A stretch of DNA of 64,000 bases, from IMG/VR virus record IMGVR_UViG_3300043446_003193, positions 62,001 to 126,000 of that record. The stretch is one strand, 5' to 3'. The notes beneath the pieces were generated by a model. It ran no database searches. It had not been told where the DNA came from and saw only the letters and a list, made by a program, of their open reading frames with translations. Below are positions 1,132-52,010 of the stretch, one piece after another (position 1 is the first letter of the stretch; each line of letters begins with the position of its first letter). The translations under genes and the position numbers were made by a program.

Positions 1132-1163
1132 GTAATATAACTAAATTATTTGGATTTACCAAA
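1132..1163 (-). promoter_or_regulatory. Bacteroidota-type promoter TTTG-N20-TATATTAC
   Basis: Read from the sequence; the -7 box ends 4 nt before the ATG at 1127. Confidence 0.65.
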
Positions 1164-1616: not shown

Positions 1617-1858
1617 TATTCAATGATTTTTGTTTCTTGTAATTCTTGTGGTAATAACTCATTTAAAGGTTTACCACAACTCGCACAAAGATATAATTCA
1701 ATTGGCATTACTGAATCTTTTGCTCCACCTGTCAATAGACGTGATATTTTTTTAAATCTATATCCTGGCATAAATACTTTTCCACCACAATCACATTCCA
1801 TGTCTCTTGCATCATTTAAGTTAAAATTAGGTGGTAATTGGTTCATTTGCTCTTGCAT
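1616..1858 (-). CDS. Zn-ribbon hypothetical protein
   Basis: CDCGG...CASCG Cys pairs; TAATG coupling to the next gene. Confidence 0.65.
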   Translation of the reverse strand: MQEQMNQLPPNFNLNDARDMECDCGGKVFMPGYRFKKISRLLTGGAKDSVMPIELYLCASCGKPLNELLPQELQETKIIE

Positions 1859-1864
1859 AATTTT

Positions 1865-5855: not shown

Positions 5856-7427
5856 TTATGGTTTGTAAAATATAAAGATTGGTTCGTATTTGTAAAACTG
5901 ACCTTCAATCTTCATACTATTTTTTGCTTTTGATAAATCCATTCCTGTCATCGGACTCATCGTCATTCTTAATTTTCCTCTATACTCCATTCCTAATTCA
6001 ACTAGAATATCAATTGAATCTTGCTCTAATGGGAAAAATTTATCCGTTCCAATTTTTATATCTGCAATATTCCAACAAATGTATCTATCATTTTTAAGAT
6101 ATTCAAATGCAGTTGTTAGTGTAGGTCGTAAGAAACCATCTCTCCAACTTTCATATGAACTAAATTTCTTAAATGATTGTGTATCATCATCGGAATATCT
6201 TTCTCTATCAAAGTATGGTGGAGAAGTAAATACAAAATCTAATTCACCTTTATACTTTTGAAATCTTTCTTCTAAGTGAATAATTTCAGAGCCAGTTGTA
6301 AAAATTTCGTAAGTATTTGCATGTCCCCAAAACGGGTTTGATGCTCCAGGTACTTTATTGTTAAAGAATTCTGCAAGATACTCATATCTAGTTTTTCCGA
6401 TTTCAGGTATTTGATTTTCTGTATTAGGGTCATTTCCTATATAATGTATATTTCTATCATCAACACTCAATGCTCCTAAAATTCTACCACCCCATCCAGC
6501 AGATGGGTCGTAAATATTAATCTTCTTTTGGTCTTTGATGTGGTTTGTAAATCTTTGGTAAAGATATTTTGCAGTTAGTGGTGGAAAATTTACCGCTGCT
6601 TGAGTTCCCATACCAATTCTAAATGCCGCAGTTGCCTCAGGGAATATAGTTTGTCCTAATGGATAAATTTTAATTTGAATTGGTTGTTTTGGAATATCAT
6701 ATAGATTATCAATATTCTCACCCCAATCTGCAGTTTTTAATGAAGATATGTTTTCATACTTCAATATACCCGCTGCATAAAGTTCTTTAACCTCTTGTGC
6801 AGTAATTGGTGGTGATGGAACTTTACTATCTGCTTGAGATAAACAAAATCCATGTCCTTCTAAGCTTTCACCAGATACCCATTTCTCAATCCATTCTTTA
6901 CCACTTTGGATATGTGAGTTATGAAATTCAGGATGATTTAAATGTAAAGTTTTAGAAAAACGATACATACCATCTTGTCTTGTCAATCTATTCATTTGTT
7001 TAATGAACTCTGGAAGATATTCATCATTTGCAAATACATCATATATAGATGGTTTTGGTTTATCATAAGTTGAACCACCAATACCTGTCTTATACATTGC
7101 AGGGAAGAATTGATTAACTGGTGTAGCAAACTTATTAAAGTTAAAGATGACTTCATTTCCTTCATCATCTTTTTCTTCAAACTCATTTACTTTATAAGTT
7201 TGTAGTCTTGAAAACTGCTCAATCATTTCTGATTCATCAACACCAATTCTAGGTGGTGCACCGGTTTCATTCCACTTTCTTACTGCTAATTCACGAAAGA
7301 ATGCCACCCACTCTCCGAACTTAGGGAATGGCATTTTAAGAACATCTTCGTATTTTAAGTTTACTTCTGGAGAGTAAATCCAATCGTTCTTTTCGTAAAA
7401 GTATTTTTTAGGATAATTAAAACTCAT
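5856..7427 (-). CDS. SAM-dependent DNA amino-methyltransferase-like protein, paralogue 1
   Basis: Motif I YDPSAGWGGR, motif IV FTSPPYF; long N-terminal extension. Confidence 0.8.
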   Translation of the reverse strand: MSFNYPKKYFYEKNDWIYSPEVNLKYEDVLKMPFPKFGEWVAFFRELAVRKWNETGAPPRIGVDESEMIEQFSRLQTYKVNEFEEKDDEGNEVIFNFNKFATPVNQFFPAMYKTGIGGSTYDKPKPSIYDVFANDEYLPEFIKQMNRLTRQDGMYRFSKTLHLNHPEFHNSHIQSGKEWIEKWVSGESLEGHGFCLSQADSKVPSPPITAQEVKELYAAGILKYENISSLKTADWGENIDNLYDIPKQPIQIKIYPLGQTIFPEATAAFRIGMGTQAAVNFPPLTAKYLYQRFTNHIKDQKKINIYDPSAGWGGRILGALSVDDRNIHYIGNDPNTENQIPEIGKTRYEYLAEFFNNKVPGASNPFWGHANTYEIFTTGSEIIHLEERFQKYKGELDFVFTSPPYFDRERYSDDDTQSFKKFSSYESWRDGFLRPTLTTAFEYLKNDRYICWNIADIKIGTDKFFPLEQDSIDILVELGMEYRGKLRMTMSPMTGMDLSKAKNSMKIEGQFYKYEPIFIFYKP

Positions 7428-8174: not shown

Positions 8175-8206
8175 TAAATATAACACTTTTTTTTGATAAT
8201 ACCAAA
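8175..8206 (-). promoter_or_regulatory. Bacteroidota-type promoter TTTG-N20-TATATTTA
   Basis: Read from the sequence upstream of the clamp gene. Confidence 0.65.
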
Positions 8207-9436
8207 TTATATTTTTTTCCATATCCATATAGGTTCGCAGAATGTTTTATCACCTGCTTCTTCTGCTTTTTTGAGTGCTTCTTCGGTGTATCTATCTTCA
8301 TCACCTTCTATAATTGAAGCTGCACCTGCACTACCTGGTCTCTTTGCCATTTCCATACCCAAACATCCTTGATATTCTGCACCCAAAGATTGAATAAAAT
8401 CATTCATTGGATTACATATTTCTTTATATCCTTTACCATCACCTTTAGAACTTGCGTATACATCTGCAATATTGATTGCTAAATATCCACCTTTACGAAT
8501 TGTAGGCCATACATTTGAAATTGTTTTATGTAAAAATAATGTATTCCAATCATCTATATTTTTATATCGTACCCAACTTTGAGTATCATCATATGAATAC
8601 CTTTCTACATTAAAATATGGTGGGGAACTGAATACAATATCAAAGTGTTCTTTATACATTGAAAGGTCTGCATCTTCTGCCGGTGATTCAATAAAATCGG
8701 CTTTCTTTTCAGTTTCAAAAAACCCGTTATTCTTTGTATAAAATTCTGCTTGTTGTCTATAAATTGGATGATTTTCTTTACGAGGATCAATACCTACATA
8801 ATGTTTTCCTTTTTCACTTGCAAAGAAACCACACATTCTATCACCCCATCCTGCTGATATATCCAAAACATTCTCAGCTTCCACGTAATCATACAATGCT
8901 TTGGCAACATTAGGTTTAAATTGAGAACATATGTATTTTCTTAAACTCAAACATACCCTCAAAGCTGCTTTATCTATTTCATCAAATTTAAGAGTATACA
9001 ATCCACCCATAAGAGTGGTCATAAATTCTTTACTTGTCCAAGTTCTCAATGGACCAGGTGAAACTGTACCATCAACACTCCAACGATTTTGTTGTTGGAA
9101 AAAATTAGATGCTTCGTTTCCGGTATTCAATCTTCTAAAGTATTGTGGTTTTCCTTGAAAATCTAAACTATATCTAAAATCGGATGCTTTTCTTGGAAAC
9201 CATTCACCTTCGGTAAGTAGTTCTCTCCAACGAATTCCTTTTAATTTAAGATATTCTTTTCTTGCTTCTTCTTCGGTAATTTCCGCATATGGAAGTGGGT
9301 ACTCCATGCAAATATCTGCAAGAGATTCTTTAACATCTTCTCTATCAAATGTTTTTTGTATATATTCCCACTCTTCTTCATTGATATGAAGATATGGTTC
9401 CATTCCTTTAAATTTATTAAAATATTCTATGAACAT
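8207..9436 (-). CDS. SAM-dependent DNA amino-methyltransferase-like protein, paralogue 2
   Basis: LDISAGWGDR and FSSPPYF motifs; start overlaps the GNAT stop. Confidence 0.8.
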   Translation of the reverse strand: MFIEYFNKFKGMEPYLHINEEEWEYIQKTFDREDVKESLADICMEYPLPYAEITEEEARKEYLKLKGIRWRELLTEGEWFPRKASDFRYSLDFQGKPQYFRRLNTGNEASNFFQQQNRWSVDGTVSPGPLRTWTSKEFMTTLMGGLYTLKFDEIDKAALRVCLSLRKYICSQFKPNVAKALYDYVEAENVLDISAGWGDRMCGFFASEKGKHYVGIDPRKENHPIYRQQAEFYTKNNGFFETEKKADFIESPAEDADLSMYKEHFDIVFSSPPYFNVERYSYDDTQSWVRYKNIDDWNTLFLHKTISNVWPTIRKGGYLAINIADVYASSKGDGKGYKEICNPMNDFIQSLGAEYQGCLGMEMAKRPGSAGAASIIEGDEDRYTEEALKKAEEAGDKTFCEPIWIWKKI

Positions 9437-9948
9437 ACTGTCTCAATATTTTTATCAGCAACTAACCTCAATCTAAAAACAATACCAGGTATTATACCAT
9501 CTTTTTTAGATGTCCAGTATATTTCACTATCCTTTACAAATCCGTTTCTATAATAGAATTCAACTGCTCTCGTATTAAACTCTCTTACGGTTAAGAACAA
9601 ATTTTCTGCATGTTGTGATTTACAATATTCTATAAATTTATTAAGAACTCTAACTGATGCTCCAGTTACTGAGTGATTACTTGCAATCTGATGTAAAATA
9701 TAATCACCTTTCTTTTTATAAGTGGTTGCGTTTCTACTCATCTTACCATTACTACCATATCTACCAAAAGTAACTACAACACCATCTTGCAGTATTATAC
9801 CACCTTTTTCAATATATTTTTCCAACTTAAAACCTTGCTTATGTAGGTGTGGAAATATTTCAGGATACAAATCAATAATAGCAGAAGCCTGATTTACTGC
9901 TTCTGTCATTTCTGTTGTACCTTTTTCTGCTTTTATAAAATTAAGCAT
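9427..9948 (-). CDS. GNAT-family acetyltransferase
   Basis: C-terminal LTVREFNTRAVEFYYRNGF GNAT signature; ATG at 9948 overlaps the AsnB-like stop. Confidence 0.8.
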   Translation of the reverse strand: MLNFIKAEKGTTEMTEAVNQASAIIDLYPEIFPHLHKQGFKLEKYIEKGGIILQDGVVVTFGRYGSNGKMSRNATTYKKKGDYILHQIASNHSVTGASVRVLNKFIEYCKSQHAENLFLTVREFNTRAVEFYYRNGFVKDSEIYWTSKKDGIIPGIVFRLRLVADKNIETVCS

Positions 9949-11398
9949 ATTCAAAAAATTTATTTAAGTTTAATTTGTCTTTATATGAATATAAGGAATT
10001 TAATTGAGATTTCAAAATATCTTTTCTGGCTTCCATCATATCGCCTGTTCTTGCACCTTTTGCAAAAAATACTTTTGGTCTAAAAAGAAGTTCATCTGAT
10101 ATTTCACCTTTAAATGCGGCTCTCAATAGTGGTTTCATATGACCGTTTTCCTTTTGATATAGTGGTGGAATGTTTAATGTATATTCCACAAATGGTCTCC
10201 AACTATATGGTGTACGAACTTCTACCGTCCCACCCCACATAATAGATTGGTTTGTTGTTAAGAAATTGGTTTTATGTACATCCTCTACTAACTTTCTCCT
10301 AGCCTTATCATAATCTTCAGGTTTGTAATGAAACGCTTGAATGTGTCCATAACTACCCCATATCTCATCGGATAGGTCACCACTAAATACTACTTTAAAT
10401 CCCAACTCATTTATCTTTTTACCCAATGCTATTTGAGCAATTGCAGAACCAACATTTTGCCATCTACTTTGTTCTATCACATAAAGTGTTTCATCTATTG
10501 CATCTAATACATCCTGTTCGCTTAATATAATTTCATGTAACTTAACACCAAATTCTTTTGCAGCTATTCTGGCATATTTTATATCATCATTCTTTGTATC
10601 ACCATCTCCCATTGATACTACAAATGCTTCAATATCAGGTTTAATTTTAGAAAGTAAATAGGTTGTAATTACTGAATCAATTCCACCACTAAGGATTGTA
10701 CAAATAGGAACATCTGATACCATTTTAACCCTTACAGCTTCTTCCATCATTGTTCTAATATTCTTAACAATAGTTTCTCTATCATCATTTATTATTTCAT
10801 TTGGAAGTTTATAATAAGTTTGTGTTGAATGTTCTAATGTATTATAATCATATTCTAAATAAGTACCTGGATAAACGGCCTTTACTTGCTTCTCATATAA
10901 TTCTGAAATTGGTAATCCTTTCTTTTCCGAACAAAATACTAATTTACCGTCATTATCAATTGCATACCATAAAGGTAATTCACCAACATAATCTCTAACA
11001 ACAAATATTTTATTAAGTTTTGTATCAACTATTGCAAATGAAAACATACCATCTAATAATTCAAATGATTTTGTTCCAAATTCACAATAAGCGTTTAGGA
11101 TGATTTCAGTATCAGATTTTGTTTTGAACTTTGTTTTTAAACCTTTTTTTAATTCTTTTGTTTCTATACTATCCCAAAGTTCACCATTGTAAACAATACA
11201 TACGGTCTTATCTTCATTCCACATTGGTTGATTTGCAGATGAAGATAAGTCCTGTATTGAAAGACGATTGTGTCCAACATAAACGTTGTCCACTTTATCT
11301 ACTTTAGAAGCATCTCTGCCTCTATGAATTATTTTATTTAATTGGGTATAGGTTTGTTCCTCAGAGGTAAACCAATTACCGCCTATTATTCCACACAT
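9941..11398 (-). CDS. asnB: Asparagine synthetase B-like amidotransferase (Ntn glutaminase plus PP-loop synthetase)
   Basis: MCGI N-terminal Cys, HNRLSI, NQPM, YNGE, SDTE, SGGIDS PP-loop; SGDLSDEIWGSY in place of the usual SGEGxDExFGGY. Confidence 0.88.
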   Translation of the reverse strand: MCGIIGGNWFTSEEQTYTQLNKIIHRGRDASKVDKVDNVYVGHNRLSIQDLSSSANQPMWNEDKTVCIVYNGELWDSIETKELKKGLKTKFKTKSDTEIILNAYCEFGTKSFELLDGMFSFAIVDTKLNKIFVVRDYVGELPLWYAIDNDGKLVFCSEKKGLPISELYEKQVKAVYPGTYLEYDYNTLEHSTQTYYKLPNEIINDDRETIVKNIRTMMEEAVRVKMVSDVPICTILSGGIDSVITTYLLSKIKPDIEAFVVSMGDGDTKNDDIKYARIAAKEFGVKLHEIILSEQDVLDAIDETLYVIEQSRWQNVGSAIAQIALGKKINELGFKVVFSGDLSDEIWGSYGHIQAFHYKPEDYDKARRKLVEDVHKTNFLTTNQSIMWGGTVEVRTPYSWRPFVEYTLNIPPLYQKENGHMKPLLRAAFKGEISDELLFRPKVFFAKGARTGDMMEARKDILKSQLNSLYSYKDKLNLNKFFEYA

Positions 11399-11402
11399 AT
11401 AA

Positions 11403-11434
11403 CTAATTTACGAAAAATAATTGATATTACCAAC
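11403..11434 (-). promoter_or_regulatory. Bacteroidota-type promoter GTTG-N20-TAAATTAG
   Basis: Read from the sequence; same spacer ending (TTTTTCG) as two other copies; 4 nt from the asnB-like ATG. Confidence 0.55.
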
Positions 11435-11697
11435 TATTTTACTGCTTCGTTTATTGCATTAACGTAAGCAATTTTTGATGAAAGACCAGTGAACCTATTT
11501 ATTTCAACTCCATCTTTTACAATTACAACGGTTGGTACTGAGCGTACTCCGTATTTTTCGGTTTCATCACTATATTCATCAATATCAATATCTTCAAATT
11601 TTACATTTGAAAATTGACCTTTGATTTCATTCATTACCGGTGCTAATGCTCTACACGGACCACACCATACTGCTGAGAATTTTTTAACTGTTACCAT
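11434..11697 (-). CDS. trxA: Thioredoxin
   Basis: WCGPC active site, GVRSVPT; adjacent to the RNR. Confidence 0.93.
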   Translation of the reverse strand: MVTVKKFSAVWCGPCRALAPVMNEIKGQFSNVKFEDIDIDEYSDETEKYGVRSVPTVVIVKDGVEINRFTGLSSKIAYVNAINEAVK

Positions 11698-11887
11698 TTT
11701 CTTTTTCTTTTTCTTTTGTATTTGTATTTCCTTTTATACCAATTGGAACATATGGACAATGGCGGCAGCCACTCCCACAGCAATAACCTCTTTCAAGGTG
11801 ATACTTAGGAGTGAACACCACTTTACCATTTTCCAAATAATATAACGATTCATCATTTTTATTTAATTTCACAAGCACCTCCTGCAC
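11684..11887 (-). CDS. Small Cys-rich protein (DUF5522-like)
   Basis: RGYCCGSGCRHCPY motif; GTG start uncertain (11887 or 11878), overlaps the RNR 3' end. Confidence 0.7.
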   Translation of the reverse strand: MQEVLVKLNKNDESLYYLENGKVVFTPKYHLERGYCCGSGCRHCPYVPIGIKGNTNTKEKEKENGNS

Positions 11888-13873: not shown

Positions 13874-14929
13874 TTAATTTTTAGTAAACACAAATATTGG
13901 TTCTAATTTAGTTCCGTTTCCAGCTACCGAAGATAATATAAGGTACAAAATGTCAGTTTTTGTAAATCCCAATTCTTCTGCAATTCTAACGGTTTCCGTT
14001 TCAATTTGTTTATATTTTGGAGTGTTTGCAATGTTTATTAACATCTTTCCTCCCACTTTTAAACCAGTATGACAATTTGCCATAGTTTGTTTTAAAAATC
14101 CGTTTAACCAATCGGTTTCATTTGGAAACTTTTTATACGATTGAGTTTCTTCATCTGAATATTTTTCCGTATCAAAATATGGTGGTGAAGTAAAACACAA
14201 ATCCAAACTTTGTTCATCTGGTATAAATTCTTCCGAACCCATTTTATGGAGTATTATCTCCTTATTAAAGAAGTTTAATTCATCTTTTAATCGTATTAAC
14301 CCTTCGTATGTTTTAGTTGAAGGATCAGTTCCTATGTAGGTTTTACACCTACTTGTAAGGAATCCGGTCAATCTACCACCCCATCCACAACTCATGTCCC
14401 AAACGGTTTCTCCACCATAGTTGTTATAAATCCATTTGGCTACCGATGGACGAAAGTTACTTACTGATTGATTTCCTCCATAGATTTTAAAATTCTGTCT
14501 TAATCGGTTTAAAGTAAATGTACCGTTTCCATGTTTCAATTGCCAATCCCAAGTTTTTCTAATAACCTCTTTTAATTTGTTATCATCATTCCAATAATCA
14601 ATTGGTTTCATTGTATTGTTACCACATGCTACTTCAACCCAATGTGGAAAATAACTCCATGCTAATGATAGGCAATGCATGGTTTGTTCTAATTTTCCAT
14701 CTTTATAAATTGTATTTTCATCAAAATTAATCAATGATTTCAATTGGTTTAGTTTTTCATGCTTTGAAACATTATAATGTGGAAATCCTTTTTTTCGGTG
14801 ATAATCAAATATAATTTTTTCAGCATGTTCTCTATCAGTTACCTCAAATATGTTTGTGGTAATTTTATGATATTCTAAATCTAAATCATCAACTTCAATA
14901 AACTTACTAAAACTATTATAATTTATCAT
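13874..14929 (-). CDS. SAM-dependent DNA amino-methyltransferase-like protein, paralogue 3
   Basis: WDMSCGWGGR and FTSPPYF motifs; TAATG-coupled to the helicase. Confidence 0.8.
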   Translation of the reverse strand: MINYNSFSKFIEVDDLDLEYHKITTNIFEVTDREHAEKIIFDYHRKKGFPHYNVSKHEKLNQLKSLINFDENTIYKDGKLEQTMHCLSLAWSYFPHWVEVACGNNTMKPIDYWNDDNKLKEVIRKTWDWQLKHGNGTFTLNRLRQNFKIYGGNQSVSNFRPSVAKWIYNNYGGETVWDMSCGWGGRLTGFLTSRCKTYIGTDPSTKTYEGLIRLKDELNFFNKEIILHKMGSEEFIPDEQSLDLCFTSPPYFDTEKYSDEETQSYKKFPNETDWLNGFLKQTMANCHTGLKVGGKMLINIANTPKYKQIETETVRIAEELGFTKTDILYLILSSVAGNGTKLEPIFVFTKN

Positions 14930-16287: not shown

Positions 16288-16544
16288 TATCCTTTCATTA
16301 AATAGTTATCAATACCTTCTGCTTCTCTTTGTTTTTCTTTTAGTTTCTTTCTCTTAAGAGCTTTTTCAGAAATTGTTTCTTCTTTCTTTTCAATTTCTTC
16401 TACCTGCTTTTGTGTAGGTTTTGGTCTAGTTGCTTTCCATTCTGATTTTGCAACATACTGCCAAGTGTGGCCTGCCATTTGATAAGCCTGTTTATCATCA
16501 ACTCTGATGATATTTCCTGTTTCTTTGTTTTTAAGACACTTCAT
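16287..16544 (-). CDS. Hypothetical basic protein
   Basis: ORF tightly packed in the operon with TAATG coupling. Confidence 0.6.
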   Translation of the reverse strand: MKCLKNKETGNIIRVDDKQAYQMAGHTWQYVAKSEWKATRPKPTQKQVEEIEKKEETISEKALKRKKLKEKQREAEGIDNYLMKG

Positions 16545-16565
16545 AGTTTACCTCCATGTTTTTTG

Positions 16566-16883
16566 TTATCTAATAACCATTAATAATTCTGATTCTCTTA
16601 ATAAGATGTATTTGTTACCACCTACTTTGATTTCTACTCCTTGATGATATGGTGGTAGAATTACTTCATCGCCTACCTTTACTGTCATTGGGATTGCTAC
16701 ACCGGCTTGAGTATATAATCCATCACCAACTGCTTCTACTTTTGCTCTTTTTACATCTTCTGATTTTGCACTATCTGGAATAATAATTCCACCTGCTGTT
16801 TTTGATTCATCTTTAACATCCAATTCGGTCAATAAAACTCTATCACCTAATGGTTTTGCTAATTTGTCTGCTGCTTTTGCCAT
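16566..16883 (-). CDS. groES: Co-chaperonin GroES
   Basis: KPLGDRVL, GGIIIPD mobile loop, VKVGD, LLRESEL. Confidence 0.93.
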   Translation of the reverse strand: MAKAADKLAKPLGDRVLLTELDVKDESKTAGGIIIPDSAKSEDVKRAKVEAVGDGLYTQAGVAIPMTVKVGDEVILPPYHQGVEIKVGGNKYILLRESELLMVIR

Positions 16884-16887
16884 AACT

Positions 16888-17103
16888 TTATTTTATTATT
16901 TTGTTTACTAAATTATTCCAATCCTGTCTTTCTATTTTATCTGCATTATACATTTCAAATTCATCTTTATCTTTATCGTTTCTAATAGTAATGATATGAT
17001 ACTCATTATTCATATCGGATTTGTATACTATTTCAGAAACATTTCTTTGTTCTGCATCGGTCATTGAATTACGAAATCTCATTACAAATACTGGTTTTGC
17101 CAT
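16888..17103 (-). CDS. Hypothetical protein
   Basis: 71 aa ORF filling the gap between neighbours. Confidence 0.6.
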   Translation of the reverse strand: MAKPVFVMRFRNSMTDAEQRNVSEIVYKSDMNNEYHIITIRNDKDKDEFEMYNADKIERQDWNNLVNKIIK

Positions 17104-17106
17104 AAC

Positions 17107-20209: not shown

Positions 20210-20241
20210 TAAATATACGACTATTTTTTGGATTTTCCAAA
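20210..20241 (-). promoter_or_regulatory. Bacteroidota-type promoter TTTG-N20-TATATTTA
   Basis: Read from the sequence upstream of the SSB gene. Confidence 0.65.
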
Positions 20242-20242
20242 T

Positions 20243-20656
20243 TTATTTTGCCCATTTTCCCCTCTGTACTAATTGGGCAATTATACCATAAACTGATAGG
20301 TCTTGGTAGGTATCTTGGATAGATTCACCCACCTCATCTGGTTGTCCCAAAACTATCAATTGTTTCAATCTTTGGATTTTATCGTTAATTCTAAACCAAA
20401 GGCCTGTAAGTGATAATTTTATATCTTCTTTGGTTTGTAGTGAAGTTCCAACGGAGATATTTCCTGGTCCATAATTTCTTTGTTTTTTACAAAATGTTTC
20501 GTACATTTCGTCTTGAATTTTCTTAAATTCAATCATCATTTCGGGATATTCCCTTTCGCAAAATTCTACTGCTGATTCTTCTTTCATATAACTTGTTTTT
20601 ACTTTTCTTATATCCGATATCGGTGGTGGGTTCGGAATTCTTGGTGAATATAACAT
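20243..20656 (-). CDS. DUF1599 / nucleotide-modification-associated domain 1-like protein
   Basis: KKQRNYG...RINDKIQRL...DTYQDLSVYGII pattern; start uncertain (20656 or 20587). Confidence 0.65.
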   Translation of the reverse strand: MLYSPRIPNPPPISDIRKVKTSYMKEESAVEFCEREYPEMMIEFKKIQDEMYETFCKKQRNYGPGNISVGTSLQTKEDIKLSLTGLWFRINDKIQRLKQLIVLGQPDEVGESIQDTYQDLSVYGIIAQLVQRGKWAK

Positions 20657-20660
20657 AATT

Positions 20661-20963
20661 TTATTTTTTCCAAAATTGATACCATTTTTTCTTTTTAACT
20701 TCTGGCTTTGCAAAGGGTTGCGTATTATCCCAAATGTTTACCATTCCTCCATATCTAACCATCATCATTTGACAAAATAATTGATGATATTGTGGTGGGA
20801 TTTTTTCAAAGTCTGCTAGGATTTTTACATCTAATGTAACACCTTGACCATCTCCTGTCATTAACTTTAGATAATCGTGCATTTCTACGACAGTACTACT
20901 TTTTACTGACAAATGTGCCCCATCTCCAATATGAAATTCACCTTTTTGTTGTTTTGGTGCCAT
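20661..20963 (-). CDS. Hypothetical protein
   Basis: Packed ORF in the operon. Confidence 0.6.
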   Translation of the reverse strand: MAPKQQKGEFHIGDGAHLSVKSSTVVEMHDYLKLMTGDGQGVTLDVKILADFEKIPPQYHQLFCQMMMVRYGGMVNIWDNTQPFAKPEVKKKKWYQFWKK

Positions 20964-20965
20964 AA

Positions 20966-21226
20966 CTATTTTTTACTGTCCCAATACATTTGTCTAACTT
21001 TTGCTCCTAATTCGGCATCGTTAGGTGTATCTAAAATTGTTCTACTATTTACTGTGATTAGGTTTCTATCTTCACCTAAATAACATTCTCTACACAACTG
21101 TCCTGCTCCTTCTACATATCCATGTCGGAAATCAATGTGAGTTGTTTTTAATGTTGTTGTTTTCTTTCCACACATTATACAATCTTCGTAAATGTCTTCA
21201 AATGGTATTTCTAACTGTTTTGACAT
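20966..21226 (-). CDS. Zn-finger hypothetical protein
   Basis: CIMC...CREC Cys pairs. Confidence 0.6.
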   Translation of the reverse strand: MSKQLEIPFEDIYEDCIMCGKKTTTLKTTHIDFRHGYVEGAGQLCRECYLGEDRNLITVNSRTILDTPNDAELGAKVRQMYWDSKK

Positions 21227-21229
21227 AAT

Positions 21230-25382: not shown

Positions 25383-25413
25383 TCAATATACGAAAAATAT
25401 TTGTATTTACAAA
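25383..25413 (-). promoter_or_regulatory. Bacteroidota-type promoter TTTG-N19-TATATTGA
   Basis: Read from the sequence; 6 nt from the ATG of the PolA-like gene. Confidence 0.6.
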
Positions 25414-51978: not shown

Positions 51979-52010
51979 TAAATATACGAAAAATAATTTA
52001 GAATACCAAA
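51979..52010 (-). promoter_or_regulatory. Bacteroidota-type promoter TTTG-N20-TATATTTA
   Basis: The only clear copy found inside the structural region; directly upstream of the glycosyltransferase cassette. Confidence 0.65.

What the first reader, a model, noticed from the sequence alone, without database searches (positions are those of the whole stretch)
8207..11434. Promoter-bounded AsnB-like amidotransferase / GNAT / methyltransferase unit inside the replisome: candidate new DNA hypermodification pathway
Seen: the three genes overlap (asnB-like stop over the GNAT ATG, GNAT stop over the MTase ATG). A promoter lies directly before asnB-like and another directly after the MTase, so they form a discrete unit between thioredoxin/RNR and the sliding clamp. 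The AsnB-like protein keeps the Ntn Cys and PP-loop but has SGDLSDEIWGSY instead of SGEGxDExFGGY. Established: AsnB-family enzymes amidate carboxylates using Gln and ATP; phage Mu Mom is a GNAT-fold enzyme making carbamoylmethyl-adenine; Rossmann MTase folds can transfer carboxymethyl or aminocarboxypropyl groups. Inference: a stepwise base modification (group transfer, amidation, acylation) on DNA or a nucleotide precursor for anti-restriction, rather than asparagine supply.
Basis: partly seen in the sequence, partly recalled or inferred. Interest (0 to 1): 0.85.

Follow-up and report, generated by a model that had tools for sequence, protein, structure and literature searches.

The report
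Phage DNA-base tailoring gene cassette
Three overlapping genes in the replication region of an uncultured freshwater jumbo phage most likely add to a DNA base and then chemically "cap" a group, extending a phage DNA-modification strategy first described in 2025, but no chemistry has been tested.

Summary
Three overlapping minus-strand genes lie between thioredoxin/RNR and the sliding clamp: an AsnB-like amidotransferase (9941-11398), a GNAT (9427-9948) and an SPPY-motif N6/N4-type methyltransferase-like gene (8207-9436). They are flanked by two copies of a promoter motif that occurs seven times in the window (0.19 expected).

The linkage is conserved. AsnB-GNAT are adjacent in 60 of 61 distinct relatives at 60% identity or more, with an MTase-like gene within 5 kb in 31 of 31. 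Relatives at 43-45% identity swap the GNAT for a PLP enzyme plus a 2-hydroxyacid dehydrogenase.

The AsnB-like protein falls in a well-supported clade of short phage proteins. That clade includes Streptomyces phage TurkishDelight gp124 (A0A7T0Q3R0), the predicted glutamine-dependent "CmoY" of the published CmoA/CmoX/CmoY pathway, in which an AsnB homologue amidates carboxymethyl-cytosine in DNA.

This locus has no CmoA and no C5-methyltransferase. The transferase is of the amino-MTase type instead, and a GNAT is added. Best reading: a new variant of the handle-plus-amide DNA hypermodification logic, possibly an aminocarboxypropyl group that is acetylated and amidated. All chemistry is inferred. 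A plain methyltransferase next to an unrelated AsnB-GNAT pair is not excluded.

The parts
11405..11433 (-). Promoter-like motif directly upstream of the AsnB-like gene. -35 is TTGGTA and -10 is TAAATT with a 17-nt spacer. The -10 ends 6 nt before the ATG, so the transcript would be leaderless.
   Evidence: Conserved at the same position in the closest relatives.
9941..11398 (-). AsnB-family glutamine-dependent amidotransferase, 485 aa. It has an Ntn-Cys glutaminase domain and a PP-loop adenylating domain. It belongs to a phage clade that includes the predicted CmoY-Gln.
9988..10016 (-). Seventh copy of the promoter motif, inside the 3' end of the AsnB-like gene and 39 nt upstream of the GNAT ATG. 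Possible internal promoter.
9427..9948 (-). GNAT N-acetyltransferase, 173 aa from the ATG at 9948 (an alternative TTG lies at 9954). Its start overlaps the AsnB-like stop.
8207..9436 (-). SPPY-motif N6/N4 amino-methyltransferase-like protein 'MT409', 409 aa. Class I MTase fold plus a family-specific N-terminal domain. Its start overlaps the GNAT stop.
8177..8205 (-). Promoter-like motif after the MTase-like gene, serving the sliding-clamp gene. -35 is TTGGTA and -10 is TATATT.
5856..7427 (-). Paralogous SPPYF MTase-like gene 'MT523'. Same family as MT409. Whether it belongs to the pathway is unknown.
13874..14929 (-). Paralogous SPPYF MTase-like gene 'MT351'. Same family as MT409. Whether it belongs to the pathway is unknown.

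Best explanation
The cassette is a nucleic-acid base hypermodification module built on the 'install a handle, then make an amide' logic of the phage CmoX/CmoY system.

Shown by sequence analysis:
- The AsnB-like enzyme keeps everything needed to hydrolyse glutamine and to adenylate a carboxylate.
- It has lost AsnB-specific segments and several pocket residues.
- It belongs to a phage-only clade with the predicted glutamine-dependent CmoY.
- It is translationally coupled to a GNAT and linked to an amino-MTase-like gene across diverged genomes.

Inferred:
1. An SPPY MTase-fold enzyme (MT409 or a paralogue) flips a base in phage DNA and transfers a SAM-derived group that carries a carboxylate to its exocyclic amine.
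2. The AsnB-like enzyme adenylates that carboxylate and converts it to a carboxamide with ammonia from glutamine.
3. The GNAT acetylates a primary amine on the same appendage.

The one handle that gives work to all three enzymes without a Cx-SAM synthase is 3-amino-3-carboxypropyl (acp) from SAM. The product would be a neutral N-acetyl-acp-amide adduct, similar in logic to diphthamide. I put about 0.2 on that specific step. The likely purpose is protection of phage DNA from host nucleases.
For: - Conserved linkage. Among 82 distinct AsnB-like sequences, the GNAT is adjacent in 40/40 at >70% identity and 20/21 at 60-70%. An MTase-like gene lies within 5 kb in 28/28 and 3/3 loci with enough flank. 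Adjacency survives rearranged flanks (L007 group, L040). Where it is interrupted, the insert is an HNH endonuclease.
- Independent contexts. L057 has GNAT-AsnB next to an SPPYF MTase-like gene. A bacterial integrative element (L058) has ParB-like, SPAYF MTase-like, two weakly MprF-C-like acyltransferase paralogues, AsnB-like and a Dam-like MTase. L062 has AsnB and an MTase-like gene 0.7 kb away.
- Type B operons at 43-45% identity read MTase-like, PALP enzyme, 2-hydroxyacid dehydrogenase, (MTase-like), AsnB. One TARA contig carries an AsnB-dehydrogenase fusion. Both alternative partner sets would act on the amine side of an alpha-amino-acid moiety.
- Homology. The best GenBank phage hit is TurkishDelight gp124, which is UniRef A0A7T0Q3R0. 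It sits in a ParB/C5-MTase/AsnB-like/CmoA-like cluster. hhalign gives probability 100 and E 4e-40 over 431 columns. In the tree, a 34-sequence clade with support 1.0 holds both, apart from 114 longer AsnB types.
- Other clade members sit beside a thymidylate-synthase homologue, or beside HhH-GPD, guanylate kinase and MazG.
- Catalytic residues are kept and pocket residues are changed.
- Published precedents: SpCmoY amidates 5cxmC in DNA (PMC12783734). PaMx11 gp48, a GNAT, acetylates a DNA-borne amine (PMC8989533).
- No CmoA, C5-MTase or thymidylate-synthase homologue in the window or in about 210 fetched loci.
- No cellular relative above 35% identity.
Against: - There is no biochemical or sequencing-signal evidence. 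Only assembled DNA contigs were available.
- The AsnB-like protein passes the broad TIGR01536 'asparagine synthase' cut-off (290 against 267 bits).
- The CmoY-Gln cluster itself is only a prediction. The authors could not obtain soluble enzyme.
- Similarity to the assayed SpCmoY is marginal (hhalign probability 56).
- The SPPYF MTase-like family is widespread in phages and giant viruses. It is usually annotated as an N4-C methylase, and 74 of 80 family loci show no AsnB within 8 kb. The adjacent gene may therefore be a plain methyltransferase.
- These phages carry 3-4 paralogues in the replication module, so any gene there lies near one.
- No solved structure resembles MT409 closely enough to judge which group it transfers.
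- A PALP-type enzyme has no obvious clean reaction on an acp group.
- The tree was midpoint-rooted and built only from the query's nearest 150 cluster representatives.
Confidence: 0.45

Rival explanations
1. The logic is the same, but the handle is carboxymethyl from host-made carboxy-SAM. MT409 would be an N6-adenine or N4-cytosine carboxymethyltransferase, and the AsnB-like enzyme would produce N-carbamoylmethyl-A or -C (for adenine, the Mom product reached by another route). The GNAT would then have a separate or accessory role.
For: This is the closest analogy to CmoX/CmoY, whose glutamine-domain cluster was predicted to use ammonia. CmoB with Cx-SAM appears among the many generic Foldseek hits. 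The CmoX authors note that N6/N4 carboxymethyltransferases are conceivable.
Against: No CmoA was found in the 64-kb window or within 8 kb in about 125 related loci, whereas CmoA usually accompanies CmoX. The model gives no role to the strictly coupled GNAT, nor to the PLP and dehydrogenase partners. The CmoB hits have rmsd around 15 A and are not specific. The remaining 145 kb of the contig were not inspected.
Confidence: 0.13
2. MT409 is an ordinary orphan DNA methyltransferase (m6A or m4C). The AsnB-GNAT pair works on something else connected with nucleotides, such as a handle installed by an enzyme encoded elsewhere or a free nucleotide precursor. Proximity would reflect a shared early/replication module.
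For: The MTase family is far wider than the AsnB association. There are three paralogues in the same module. MT409-like orthologues sit beside PolB without a visible AsnB (L171-L178). AsnB and GNAT are much more tightly coupled to each other than to the MTase. Other clade members sit next to a thymidylate-synthase homologue or nucleotide-metabolism genes rather than an amino-MTase.
Against: An MTase-like gene is adjacent in unrelated contexts, including a bacterial island and the type B operons. No alternative installer (thymidylate-synthase homologue, DpdA, kinase/aGPT) was seen in the window's replication module.
Confidence: 0.22
3. The pair is an auxiliary metabolic function. The AsnB-like enzyme would supply asparagine or, with the GNAT, make a small N-acetylated amino-acid amide (compare the AsnO-Ngg pathway for N-acetylglutaminylglutamine amide).
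For: The protein passes TIGR01536. The sources name it asparagine synthase. Other phages carry AsnB homologues in metabolic or glycan clusters, such as S-SCSM1. AsnB+GNAT pairing is known from NAGGN synthesis (my own knowledge).
Against: It fails the AsnB equivalog (283 against 499 bits) and the NAGGN amidotransferase model (183 against 570 bits). Pocket residues are changed and two AsnB segments are missing. The clade is phage-only. The gene is embedded in the replisome and is more conserved than PolB in some lineages (about 90% against 59%). A dehydrogenase fusion and MTase-like partners also occur.
Confidence: 0.1
4. The pair modifies a protein or peptide, for example by amidating a carboxylate and acetylating an N-terminus of a phage or host protein.
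For: The top structural neighbours of the GNAT include RimI and N-terminal acetyltransferases. AsnB homologues act on peptides in lasso-peptide biosynthesis (weak model hit).
Against: No conserved precursor peptide or partner protein gene is present. The lasso cyclase model scores 112 against 525 bits. The glutaminase domain is intact, which cyclases do not need. The phylogenetic neighbours sit in nucleic-acid contexts.
Confidence: 0.05

Closest known systems
CmoA/CmoX/CmoY 5-carboxymethylcytosine hypermodification of Synechococcus phage S-B43, with its predicted glutamine-dependent CmoY cluster represented by Streptomyces phage TurkishDelight gp124, A0A7T0Q3R0 (Yang et al., Nat Commun 2025, PMC12783734)
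   Same: A phage replication-region cassette of overlapping genes that pairs an MTase-fold enzyme with an asparagine-synthetase homologue. The window protein aligns end to end with gp124 at 32% identity and shares a well-supported clade with it. Both keep the glutaminase domain and are about 70 residues shorter than AsnB.
   Different: The transferase here is an SPPY amino-MTase type (PF01555-like), not a C5-MTase with SPPC and R350. No CmoA was found. A GNAT is translationally coupled, or a PLP enzyme plus dehydrogenase in distant relatives. Similarity to the assayed SpCmoY is marginal. The authors report finding no N6/N4 candidates associated with CmoA.
E. coli asparagine synthetase B (PDB 1ct9)
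   Same: Two-domain architecture, Cys1 nucleophile, R49/N74/G75/E76/D98, PP-loop, D351, E352, K429 and K449. Passes TIGR01536.
   Different: 29% identity. Lacks the insertion near residues 250-263 and the C-terminal ~70 residues. R325 is G, T322/T323 are Q/N, E348 is D, G349 is L, D384 is N and R387 is T. Fails NF006949 (283 against 499 bits).
PaMx11 gp48, the 5-aminomethyl-dU N-acetyltransferase of thymidine hypermodification (PMC8989533)
   Same: A small GNAT in a phage DNA-modification cluster that acetylates a primary amine on a base appendage. This is the functional role proposed here.
   Different: No sequence comparison was made. That pathway depends on 5-hmdU, a DNA kinase and an amino-acid:DNA transferase, none of which were seen here.
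Phage Mu Mom (GNAT, Gly-tRNA-dependent N6-carbamoylmethyl-adenine; PMC13219725)
   Same: A GNAT fold used for adenine hypermodification. A carbamoylmethyl product is one possible outcome of the rival Cx-SAM route.
   Different: No Mom match at E<=1 by sequence, and Mom is not among the top 50 Foldseek hits. Mom needs no AsnB-like or MTase-like partner.
Diphthamide biosynthesis (acp transfer from SAM, modification of the amine, ATP-dependent amidation of the carboxylate by a PP-loop enzyme)
   Same: The same three-step chemical logic as the acp hypothesis (my own knowledge; analogy only).
   Different: The target is a protein histidine. The enzymes are unrelated (radical-SAM Dph2, Dph5, Dph6). 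Nothing was tested here.

Membership tests
Asparagine synthetase B (glutamine-hydrolysing) | N-terminal Cys nucleophile and glutamine-site residues (R49, N74, G75, E76, D98) | tested here: met
   Alignment with E. coli AsnB. These residues are invariant across the window family.
Asparagine synthetase B (glutamine-hydrolysing) | PP-loop SGGxDS and adenylation residues (E348, D351, E352, K429, K449) | tested here: met
   SGGIDS, D351, E352, K429 and K449 are kept. E348 is Asp in the window's subclade.
Asparagine synthetase B (glutamine-hydrolysing) | Aspartate and intermediate-binding residues (T322, T323, R325, D384, R387; roles recalled from the literature, not verified here) | tested here: not met
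   The residues at these positions are Q, N, G, N and T. A paper search to confirm the roles found nothing.
Asparagine synthetase B (glutamine-hydrolysing) | Curated family score | tested here: inconclusive
   TIGR01536 scores 290 against 267.1 and passes. NF006949 'asparagine synthase B' scores 283 against 499 and fails.
CmoA/CmoX/CmoY DNA hypermodification | AsnB-homologous amide ligase of the CmoY type | tested here: inconclusive
   Shares a clade (support 1.0) and a 32% full-length alignment with A0A7T0Q3R0. That cluster is unassayed, and the match to the assayed SpCmoY is weak.
CmoA/CmoX/CmoY DNA hypermodification | C5-cytosine MTase homologue with SPPC motif and the Cx-SAM-binding Arg | tested here: not met
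   The MTase-like genes are PF01555/SPPY type. There is no tblastn hit to S-B43 or TurkishDelight CmoX in the window or the fetched loci.
CmoA/CmoX/CmoY DNA hypermodification | [quoted passage not shown] | tested here: not met
   No hit in the 64-kb window or in the flanks of related loci. The remaining 145 kb of the contig were not inspected.
CmoA/CmoX/CmoY DNA hypermodification | The substrate is a carboxylate on a base in DNA | not testable with these tools
   Needs LC-MS or enzymology.
GNAT acetyltransferases | GNAT fold with the beta4-alpha3 and alpha4 motifs | tested here: met
   PF00583 scores 26.9 against 20.7. AF2 pLDDT is 90.6 and the top Foldseek hits are PaiA, RimI and phosphinothricin acetyltransferase. 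LTVRxFNxxAxxFYxxxGF is conserved.
N6/N4 DNA amino-methyltransferases | Motif I (GxG) and motif IV (D/N/S)PPY on a class I MTase fold | tested here: met
   DISAGWGDR and SSPPYF are invariant across paralogues. The fold is confirmed. PADLOC MTase_II gives E 9e-9.
N6/N4 DNA amino-methyltransferases | Pfam PF01555 gathering score | tested here: not met
   19.6, 26.3 and 24.2 bits for the three paralogues against a cut-off of 26.7.
N6/N4 DNA amino-methyltransferases | Transfers methyl to adenine N6 or cytosine N4 | not testable with these tools
   The nature of the transferred group cannot be read from the sequence or from the model.
Mom-type tRNA-dependent GNAT | Sequence or structural similarity to Mom | tested here: not met
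   No Mom chain at E<=1. Mom is not among the top 50 Foldseek PDB hits.
NAGGN pathway amidotransferase (AsnO) | TIGR03104 score | tested here: not met
   183 bits against a cut-off of 570.

The most novel reading that the evidence does not exclude
These phages (and a related bacterial mobile element) decorate an exocyclic amine of a DNA base with a SAM-derived 3-amino-3-carboxypropyl group installed by an SPPY amino-MTase-fold enzyme. They then neutralise it by N-acetylation (GNAT), or by conversion of the amine to a hydroxyl (PLP enzyme plus dehydrogenase), together with glutamine-dependent amidation (AsnB-like). This would be a diphthamide-like DNA hypermodification that has never been observed, and it would imply that part of a large viral 'N4-methylase' family does not transfer methyl.
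Probability: 0.15. Interest if true: 0.9.

Novelty: new variant of a known kind. Interest (0 to 1): 0.62.

Why it matters
If the reading is right, it widens the 'carboxylate handle plus amide ligase' route to DNA hypermodification, published in 2025, beyond C5 of cytosine.

- The installer would be an amino-methyltransferase-type enzyme, the class that paper's authors looked for and did not find associated with CmoA.
- It would add two new tailoring modules: GNAT, or PLP enzyme plus dehydrogenase.
- It would give the first testable member of the glutamine-dependent branch, which resisted expression.
- The family is abundant in freshwater and marine viromes, with thousands of metagenomic sequences. 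Such a modification would therefore affect restriction evasion, sequencing and assembly biases, and host-range inference for a large group of uncultured jumbo phages.
- It could also supply new enzymes for site-specific DNA functionalisation.

If the rival is right, the locus is an ordinary orphan methylase beside a still-unexplained AsnB-GNAT pair.

Tried and rejected
- DNA similarity to GenBank phages: none. No cultured phage carries the module; the best AsnB hit is 29% and the best MT409 hits are about 30% in Bacteroides and Vibrio phages.
- Species-genome scan: only relatives at 35% identity or less.
- The first homologue search was saturated by relatives at 73% or more. The 50%-cluster search and profile-based locus scans were needed to reach further.
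- PDB sequence search for MT409: nothing significant. Foldseek against the PDB gave only generic class I MTases at TM 0.35 or less, so nothing can be inferred about the transferred group.
- Charge and pI of the synthetase domain as a proxy for DNA binding: uninformative, because the assayed DNA enzyme SpCmoY is itself acidic.
- The S-SCSM1 AsnB homologue lies in a glycosyltransferase cluster and was rejected as a model.
- The exact 13-mer flanking motif with up to 2 mismatches is not enriched. The longer spaced motif is. A first mis-spaced pattern gave no hits.
- A literature check of AsnB residue roles found no open paper.
- The reverse association test is weak because many flanks are short.
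- Read laying was not used, because every run found held only assembled DNA contigs, which carry no modification signal.
- The 145 kb of the source contig outside the window were not inspected for CmoA or other installers.

Full report
**What is there.** The window is part of IMG/VR contig IMGVR_UViG_3300043446_003193 (209 kb; the window corresponds to contig positions 62001-126000), an uncultured freshwater phage. Every ORF of 90 aa or more that fits the gene map lies on the minus strand.

In the direction of transcription the neighbourhood reads:
- DnaB-like helicase
- SPPYF MTase-like gene 'MT351' (13874-14929)
- class II RNR
- DUF5522
- thioredoxin
- AsnB-like gene (9941-11398)
- GNAT (9427-9948)
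- SPPYF MTase-like gene 'MT409' (8207-9436)
- PCNA-like clamp
- SPPYF MTase-like gene 'MT523' (5856-7427)
- family B DNA polymerase

**Promoters.** Six intergenic gaps share a motif: TTKG, 19 nt, TAWATT, with further fixed positions. A pattern derived from them matches seven times, always on the coding strand, against 0.19 expected.
- One copy fills the 35-nt gap before the AsnB-like gene. Its -10 ends 6 nt before the ATG, so the mRNA would be leaderless.
- One copy lies directly after MT409.
- The seventh, which was not used to build the pattern, lies inside the 3' end of the AsnB-like gene, 39 nt before the GNAT start.

The unit is therefore promoter-flanked as claimed, but it may also have an internal promoter. 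No terminators separate it from its neighbours. The upstream promoter is conserved in the closest relatives only.

**The three proteins.**

The AsnB-like protein aligns over its whole length with E. coli AsnB (E 1.2e-48, 29% identity).
- It keeps Cys1, R49, N74-G75-E76, D98, the PP-loop, D351, E352, K429 and K449.
- It lacks the E. coli insertion near residues 250-263 and the last ~70 residues.
- It has G at R325, Q/N at T322/T323, D at E348, L at G349, N at D384 and T at R387. The roles of those residues in binding aspartate and the adenylate are from my memory of the AsnB literature. A search for an open paper to confirm them failed.
- It passes the broad TIGR01536 model but fails the AsnB equivalog.
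- SGDLSDE is peculiar to the window's subclade. Relatives at 30-50% identity keep SGEGSDE.

The GNAT is a confident GNAT fold (pLDDT 90.6). It is nearest to acetyl-CoA enzymes that acetylate primary amines of amino acids, polyamines and peptide N-termini, and it is unlike Mom.

MT409 has a class I MTase core with motif I and an invariant SPPYF motif IV, followed by a family-specific ExYSxxxTQS segment, plus its own N-terminal domain.
- It belongs to a large virus-specific family, often labelled N4-cytosine methylase.
- It sits just below the Pfam PF01555 threshold.
- No solved structure is close enough to say which group it transfers.

**Is the linkage conserved?** Yes. I collected about 125 loci carrying relatives of the AsnB-like gene. 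After removing duplicates, 82 distinct sequences remained.
- Above 70% identity, the GNAT is adjacent in 40 of 40, and an MTase-like gene lies within 5 kb in 28 of 28 loci with enough flank.
- At 60-70% identity, the GNAT is adjacent in 20 of 21. The MTase-like gene is separated by 2-4 kb that contain an HNH homing endonuclease and small ORFs.
- The trio stays together where the flanks are rearranged. In the L007 group the AsnB-like gene is about 90% identical while PolB is 59% and the GNAT 50%, which suggests strong constraint or modular exchange.

At 43-45% identity a second architecture appears ('type B'): MTase-like (about 480 aa), a PALP-family PLP enzyme, a D-2-hydroxyacid dehydrogenase, often a second MTase-like gene, then AsnB-like. 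It has no GNAT. A TARA contig encodes an AsnB-dehydrogenase fusion followed by the PLP enzyme.

Two further contexts are independent of this phage lineage:
- L057 has a GNAT and the AsnB-like gene overlapping in the opposite order, beside an SPPYF MTase-like gene.
- An integrase-bearing element in a bacterial genome has a ParB-like gene, an SPAYF MTase-like gene, two paralogues with a weak match to the aminoacyl-tRNA-dependent MprF C-domain, the AsnB-like gene and a Dam-like methylase.

**Caveat on the methyltransferase.** The SPPYF family is much wider than the AsnB association. Of 80 loci fetched with a family profile, 74 show no AsnB-like gene within 8 kb, although many flanks are short. 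These phages also carry three or four conserved paralogues in the replication module. The tight pair is AsnB-GNAT. The link to the MTase-like gene is recurrent but looser.

**Relation to known systems.** A literature search led to Yang et al. 2025 (PMC12783734).
- In Synechococcus phage S-B43, CmoA makes carboxy-SAM.
- The C5-MTase homologue CmoX puts carboxymethyl on cytosine.
- CmoY, an asparagine-synthetase homologue without the glutaminase domain, ligates glycine to that carboxylate in DNA.
- The second-largest CmoY cluster, represented by A0A7T0Q3R0, keeps the glutaminase domain and was predicted to use ammonia, but it could not be expressed in soluble form.

The best GenBank phage hit of the window protein is Streptomyces phage TurkishDelight gp124, and an exact look-up shows that this is A0A7T0Q3R0. 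Its neighbours are two ParB-like genes, a C5-MTase and a CmoA-like gene. A profile comparison gives probability 100 and E 4e-40 over 431 columns.

I built a tree of 148 sequences from the query's nearest 50%-identity cluster representatives plus references. A clade of 34 short proteins (support 1.0) contains the window family and the gp124 subclade as sisters, and 114 mostly longer AsnB types lie outside. The tree is midpoint-rooted FastTree, so the branching order is indicative only.

Other members of the clade sit beside a thymidylate-synthase homologue and a glutathionylspermidine-synthase-like ligase, or beside HhH-GPD, guanylate kinase and MazG genes. Species genomes hold nothing closer than 35% identity.

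The window locus differs from the published system in three ways.
- It has no C5-MTase.
- It has no CmoA, either in the window or in any fetched flank.
- It has a coupled GNAT.

The authors state that they found no N6/N4 carboxymethyltransferase candidates associated with CmoA.

**Mechanism.**

Shown by sequence analysis: a glutamine-hydrolysing, carboxylate-adenylating enzyme of a phage clade allied to DNA-modifying CmoY; translational coupling to an acetyl-CoA-type GNAT; and recurrent linkage to amino-MTase-like genes.

Inferred: the enzymes tailor a group appended to a base in phage DNA. The partners that alternate with one another (a GNAT, or a PLP enzyme plus a 2-hydroxyacid dehydrogenase, or aminoacyl-transferase-like proteins) all make sense if the appendage carries both an amine and a carboxylate, that is, an alpha-amino-acid moiety.

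A SAM-dependent MTase-fold enzyme can deliver such a moiety without any extra cofactor synthase by transferring 3-amino-3-carboxypropyl. This reaction is known for RNA- and protein-modifying enzymes (my own knowledge). The GNAT would then cap the amine and the AsnB-like enzyme the carboxylate.

I rate the general reading (nucleic-acid base tailoring) at about 0.5 and the acp detail at about 0.15-0.2. A carboxymethyl handle from host Cx-SAM is the main chemical alternative, but it leaves the GNAT idle. A plain methylase beside an AsnB-GNAT pair that acts on another nucleotide-linked substrate is the main biological alternative.

**A further lead.** The viral structure search returned a 699-aa Satyrvirus protein named 'glutathione synthase' that aligns with the MT409 model over 426 columns (TM 0.60). 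If it is a fusion of this MTase-like fold with an ATP-grasp ligase, it would independently tie the family to carboxylate-amine ligation. I could not fetch the sequence to check.

**Limits.** There is no experimental or read-level evidence. The rest of the contig was not examined.

**Verdict.** The locus is a new variant of a known kind and is worth an LC-MS test.

Noticed in passing
window 1134-1162, 8177-8205, 9988-10016, 11405-11433, 20212-20240, 25385-25413, 51981-52009 (all - strand): A shared 29-nt promoter-like motif (TTKG, 19 nt, TAWATT; often TTTGG..CCAAA with partial dyad symmetry) occurs 7 times against 0.19 expected. Three copies end 6-8 nt before an ATG, which implies leaderless mRNAs. 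The TTTG / TAnnTTT spacing resembles Bacteroidota promoters (my own knowledge), which hints at the host.
   Followed up: partly
window 5856-7427, 8207-9436, 13874-14929: Three diverged paralogues (24-26% identity) of one SPPYF MTase-like family lie within 9 kb of the replication module. Each is conserved as an orthologue across related phages, and some relatives have a fourth copy (for example L115 5829-7064).
   Followed up: partly
L116-L129 (for example L119 4885-9434); L061 8001-11044: 'Type B' operon: MTase-like, PALP-type PLP enzyme (ACC-deaminase-like KRDDL...GK motif), D-2-hydroxyacid dehydrogenase, (MTase-like), AsnB-like. One TARA Oceans contig carries a 761-aa AsnB-dehydrogenase fusion.
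   Followed up: partly
L058 391-11262 (NCBI GCA_054685795.1 contig BAAFTP010000021.1): A bacterial integrative element (integrase at 391-1491) carries a ParB-like gene, an SPAYF MTase-like gene, two 270-aa paralogues with a weak LPG_synthase_C match, an AsnB-like gene (about 45% identity to the window protein), a 194-aa unknown and a Dam-like D12 methylase. It may be a cellular version of the same modification system.
   Followed up: partly
L214 4574-8186: A more distant member of the short AsnB clade (P0172) sits between a glutathionylspermidine-synthase-like ligase and a thymidylate-synthase homologue. This is a classic pyrimidine-hypermodification context.
   Followed up: no
BFVD hit A0A3G5AD75 (Satyrvirus): A 699-aa giant-virus protein named 'glutathione synthase' aligns structurally with the whole MT409 model (TM 0.60). 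It may be a fusion of the MTase-like fold with an ATP-grasp ligase. The family is also present in pithoviruses and salmon gill poxvirus.
   Followed up: no
L007, L011-L015, L025, L035-L036, L046 against the window: Mosaic conservation: the AsnB-like gene is 82-90% identical and MT409 74-75%, but the GNAT between them is only 49-50% and PolB/clamp 57-59%. This suggests exchange of modules or very uneven constraint.
   Followed up: no
L101 10154-11692: An HNH homing endonuclease (512 aa) is inserted between the GNAT and the MT409 orthologue in the group at about 66% identity.
   Followed up: yes
window 11684-11887: A small Cys-rich DUF5522 protein (E 2e-18) overlaps both the RNR stop and the thioredoxin start. 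It is conserved in that position in most relatives.
   Followed up: no
window 20243-20713: A 156-aa ORF has a borderline match to DUF1599, 'nucleotide modification associated domain 1' (24 bits against a cut-off of 25).
   Followed up: no
window 16566-16883: A phage-encoded GroES/Cpn10 homologue (E 1.7e-24) lies in the replication region.
   Followed up: no
window 1617-1864, 16288-16565, 16884-17106, 20964-21229: 'Intergenic' stretches of 220-280 nt read as small minus-strand ORFs starting with ATG, some with paired Cys motifs. They are probably unlisted small genes rather than non-coding DNA.
   Followed up: no
Erwinia and Dickeya jumbo phages (for example MH460463.1 12263-14467): A CmoA-like gene and a weak AsnB-synthetase-domain match lie about 1-2 kb apart in many cultured Erwinia/Dickeya jumbo phages. 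These are likely CmoA/X/Y carriers that could serve as experimental comparators.
   Followed up: no
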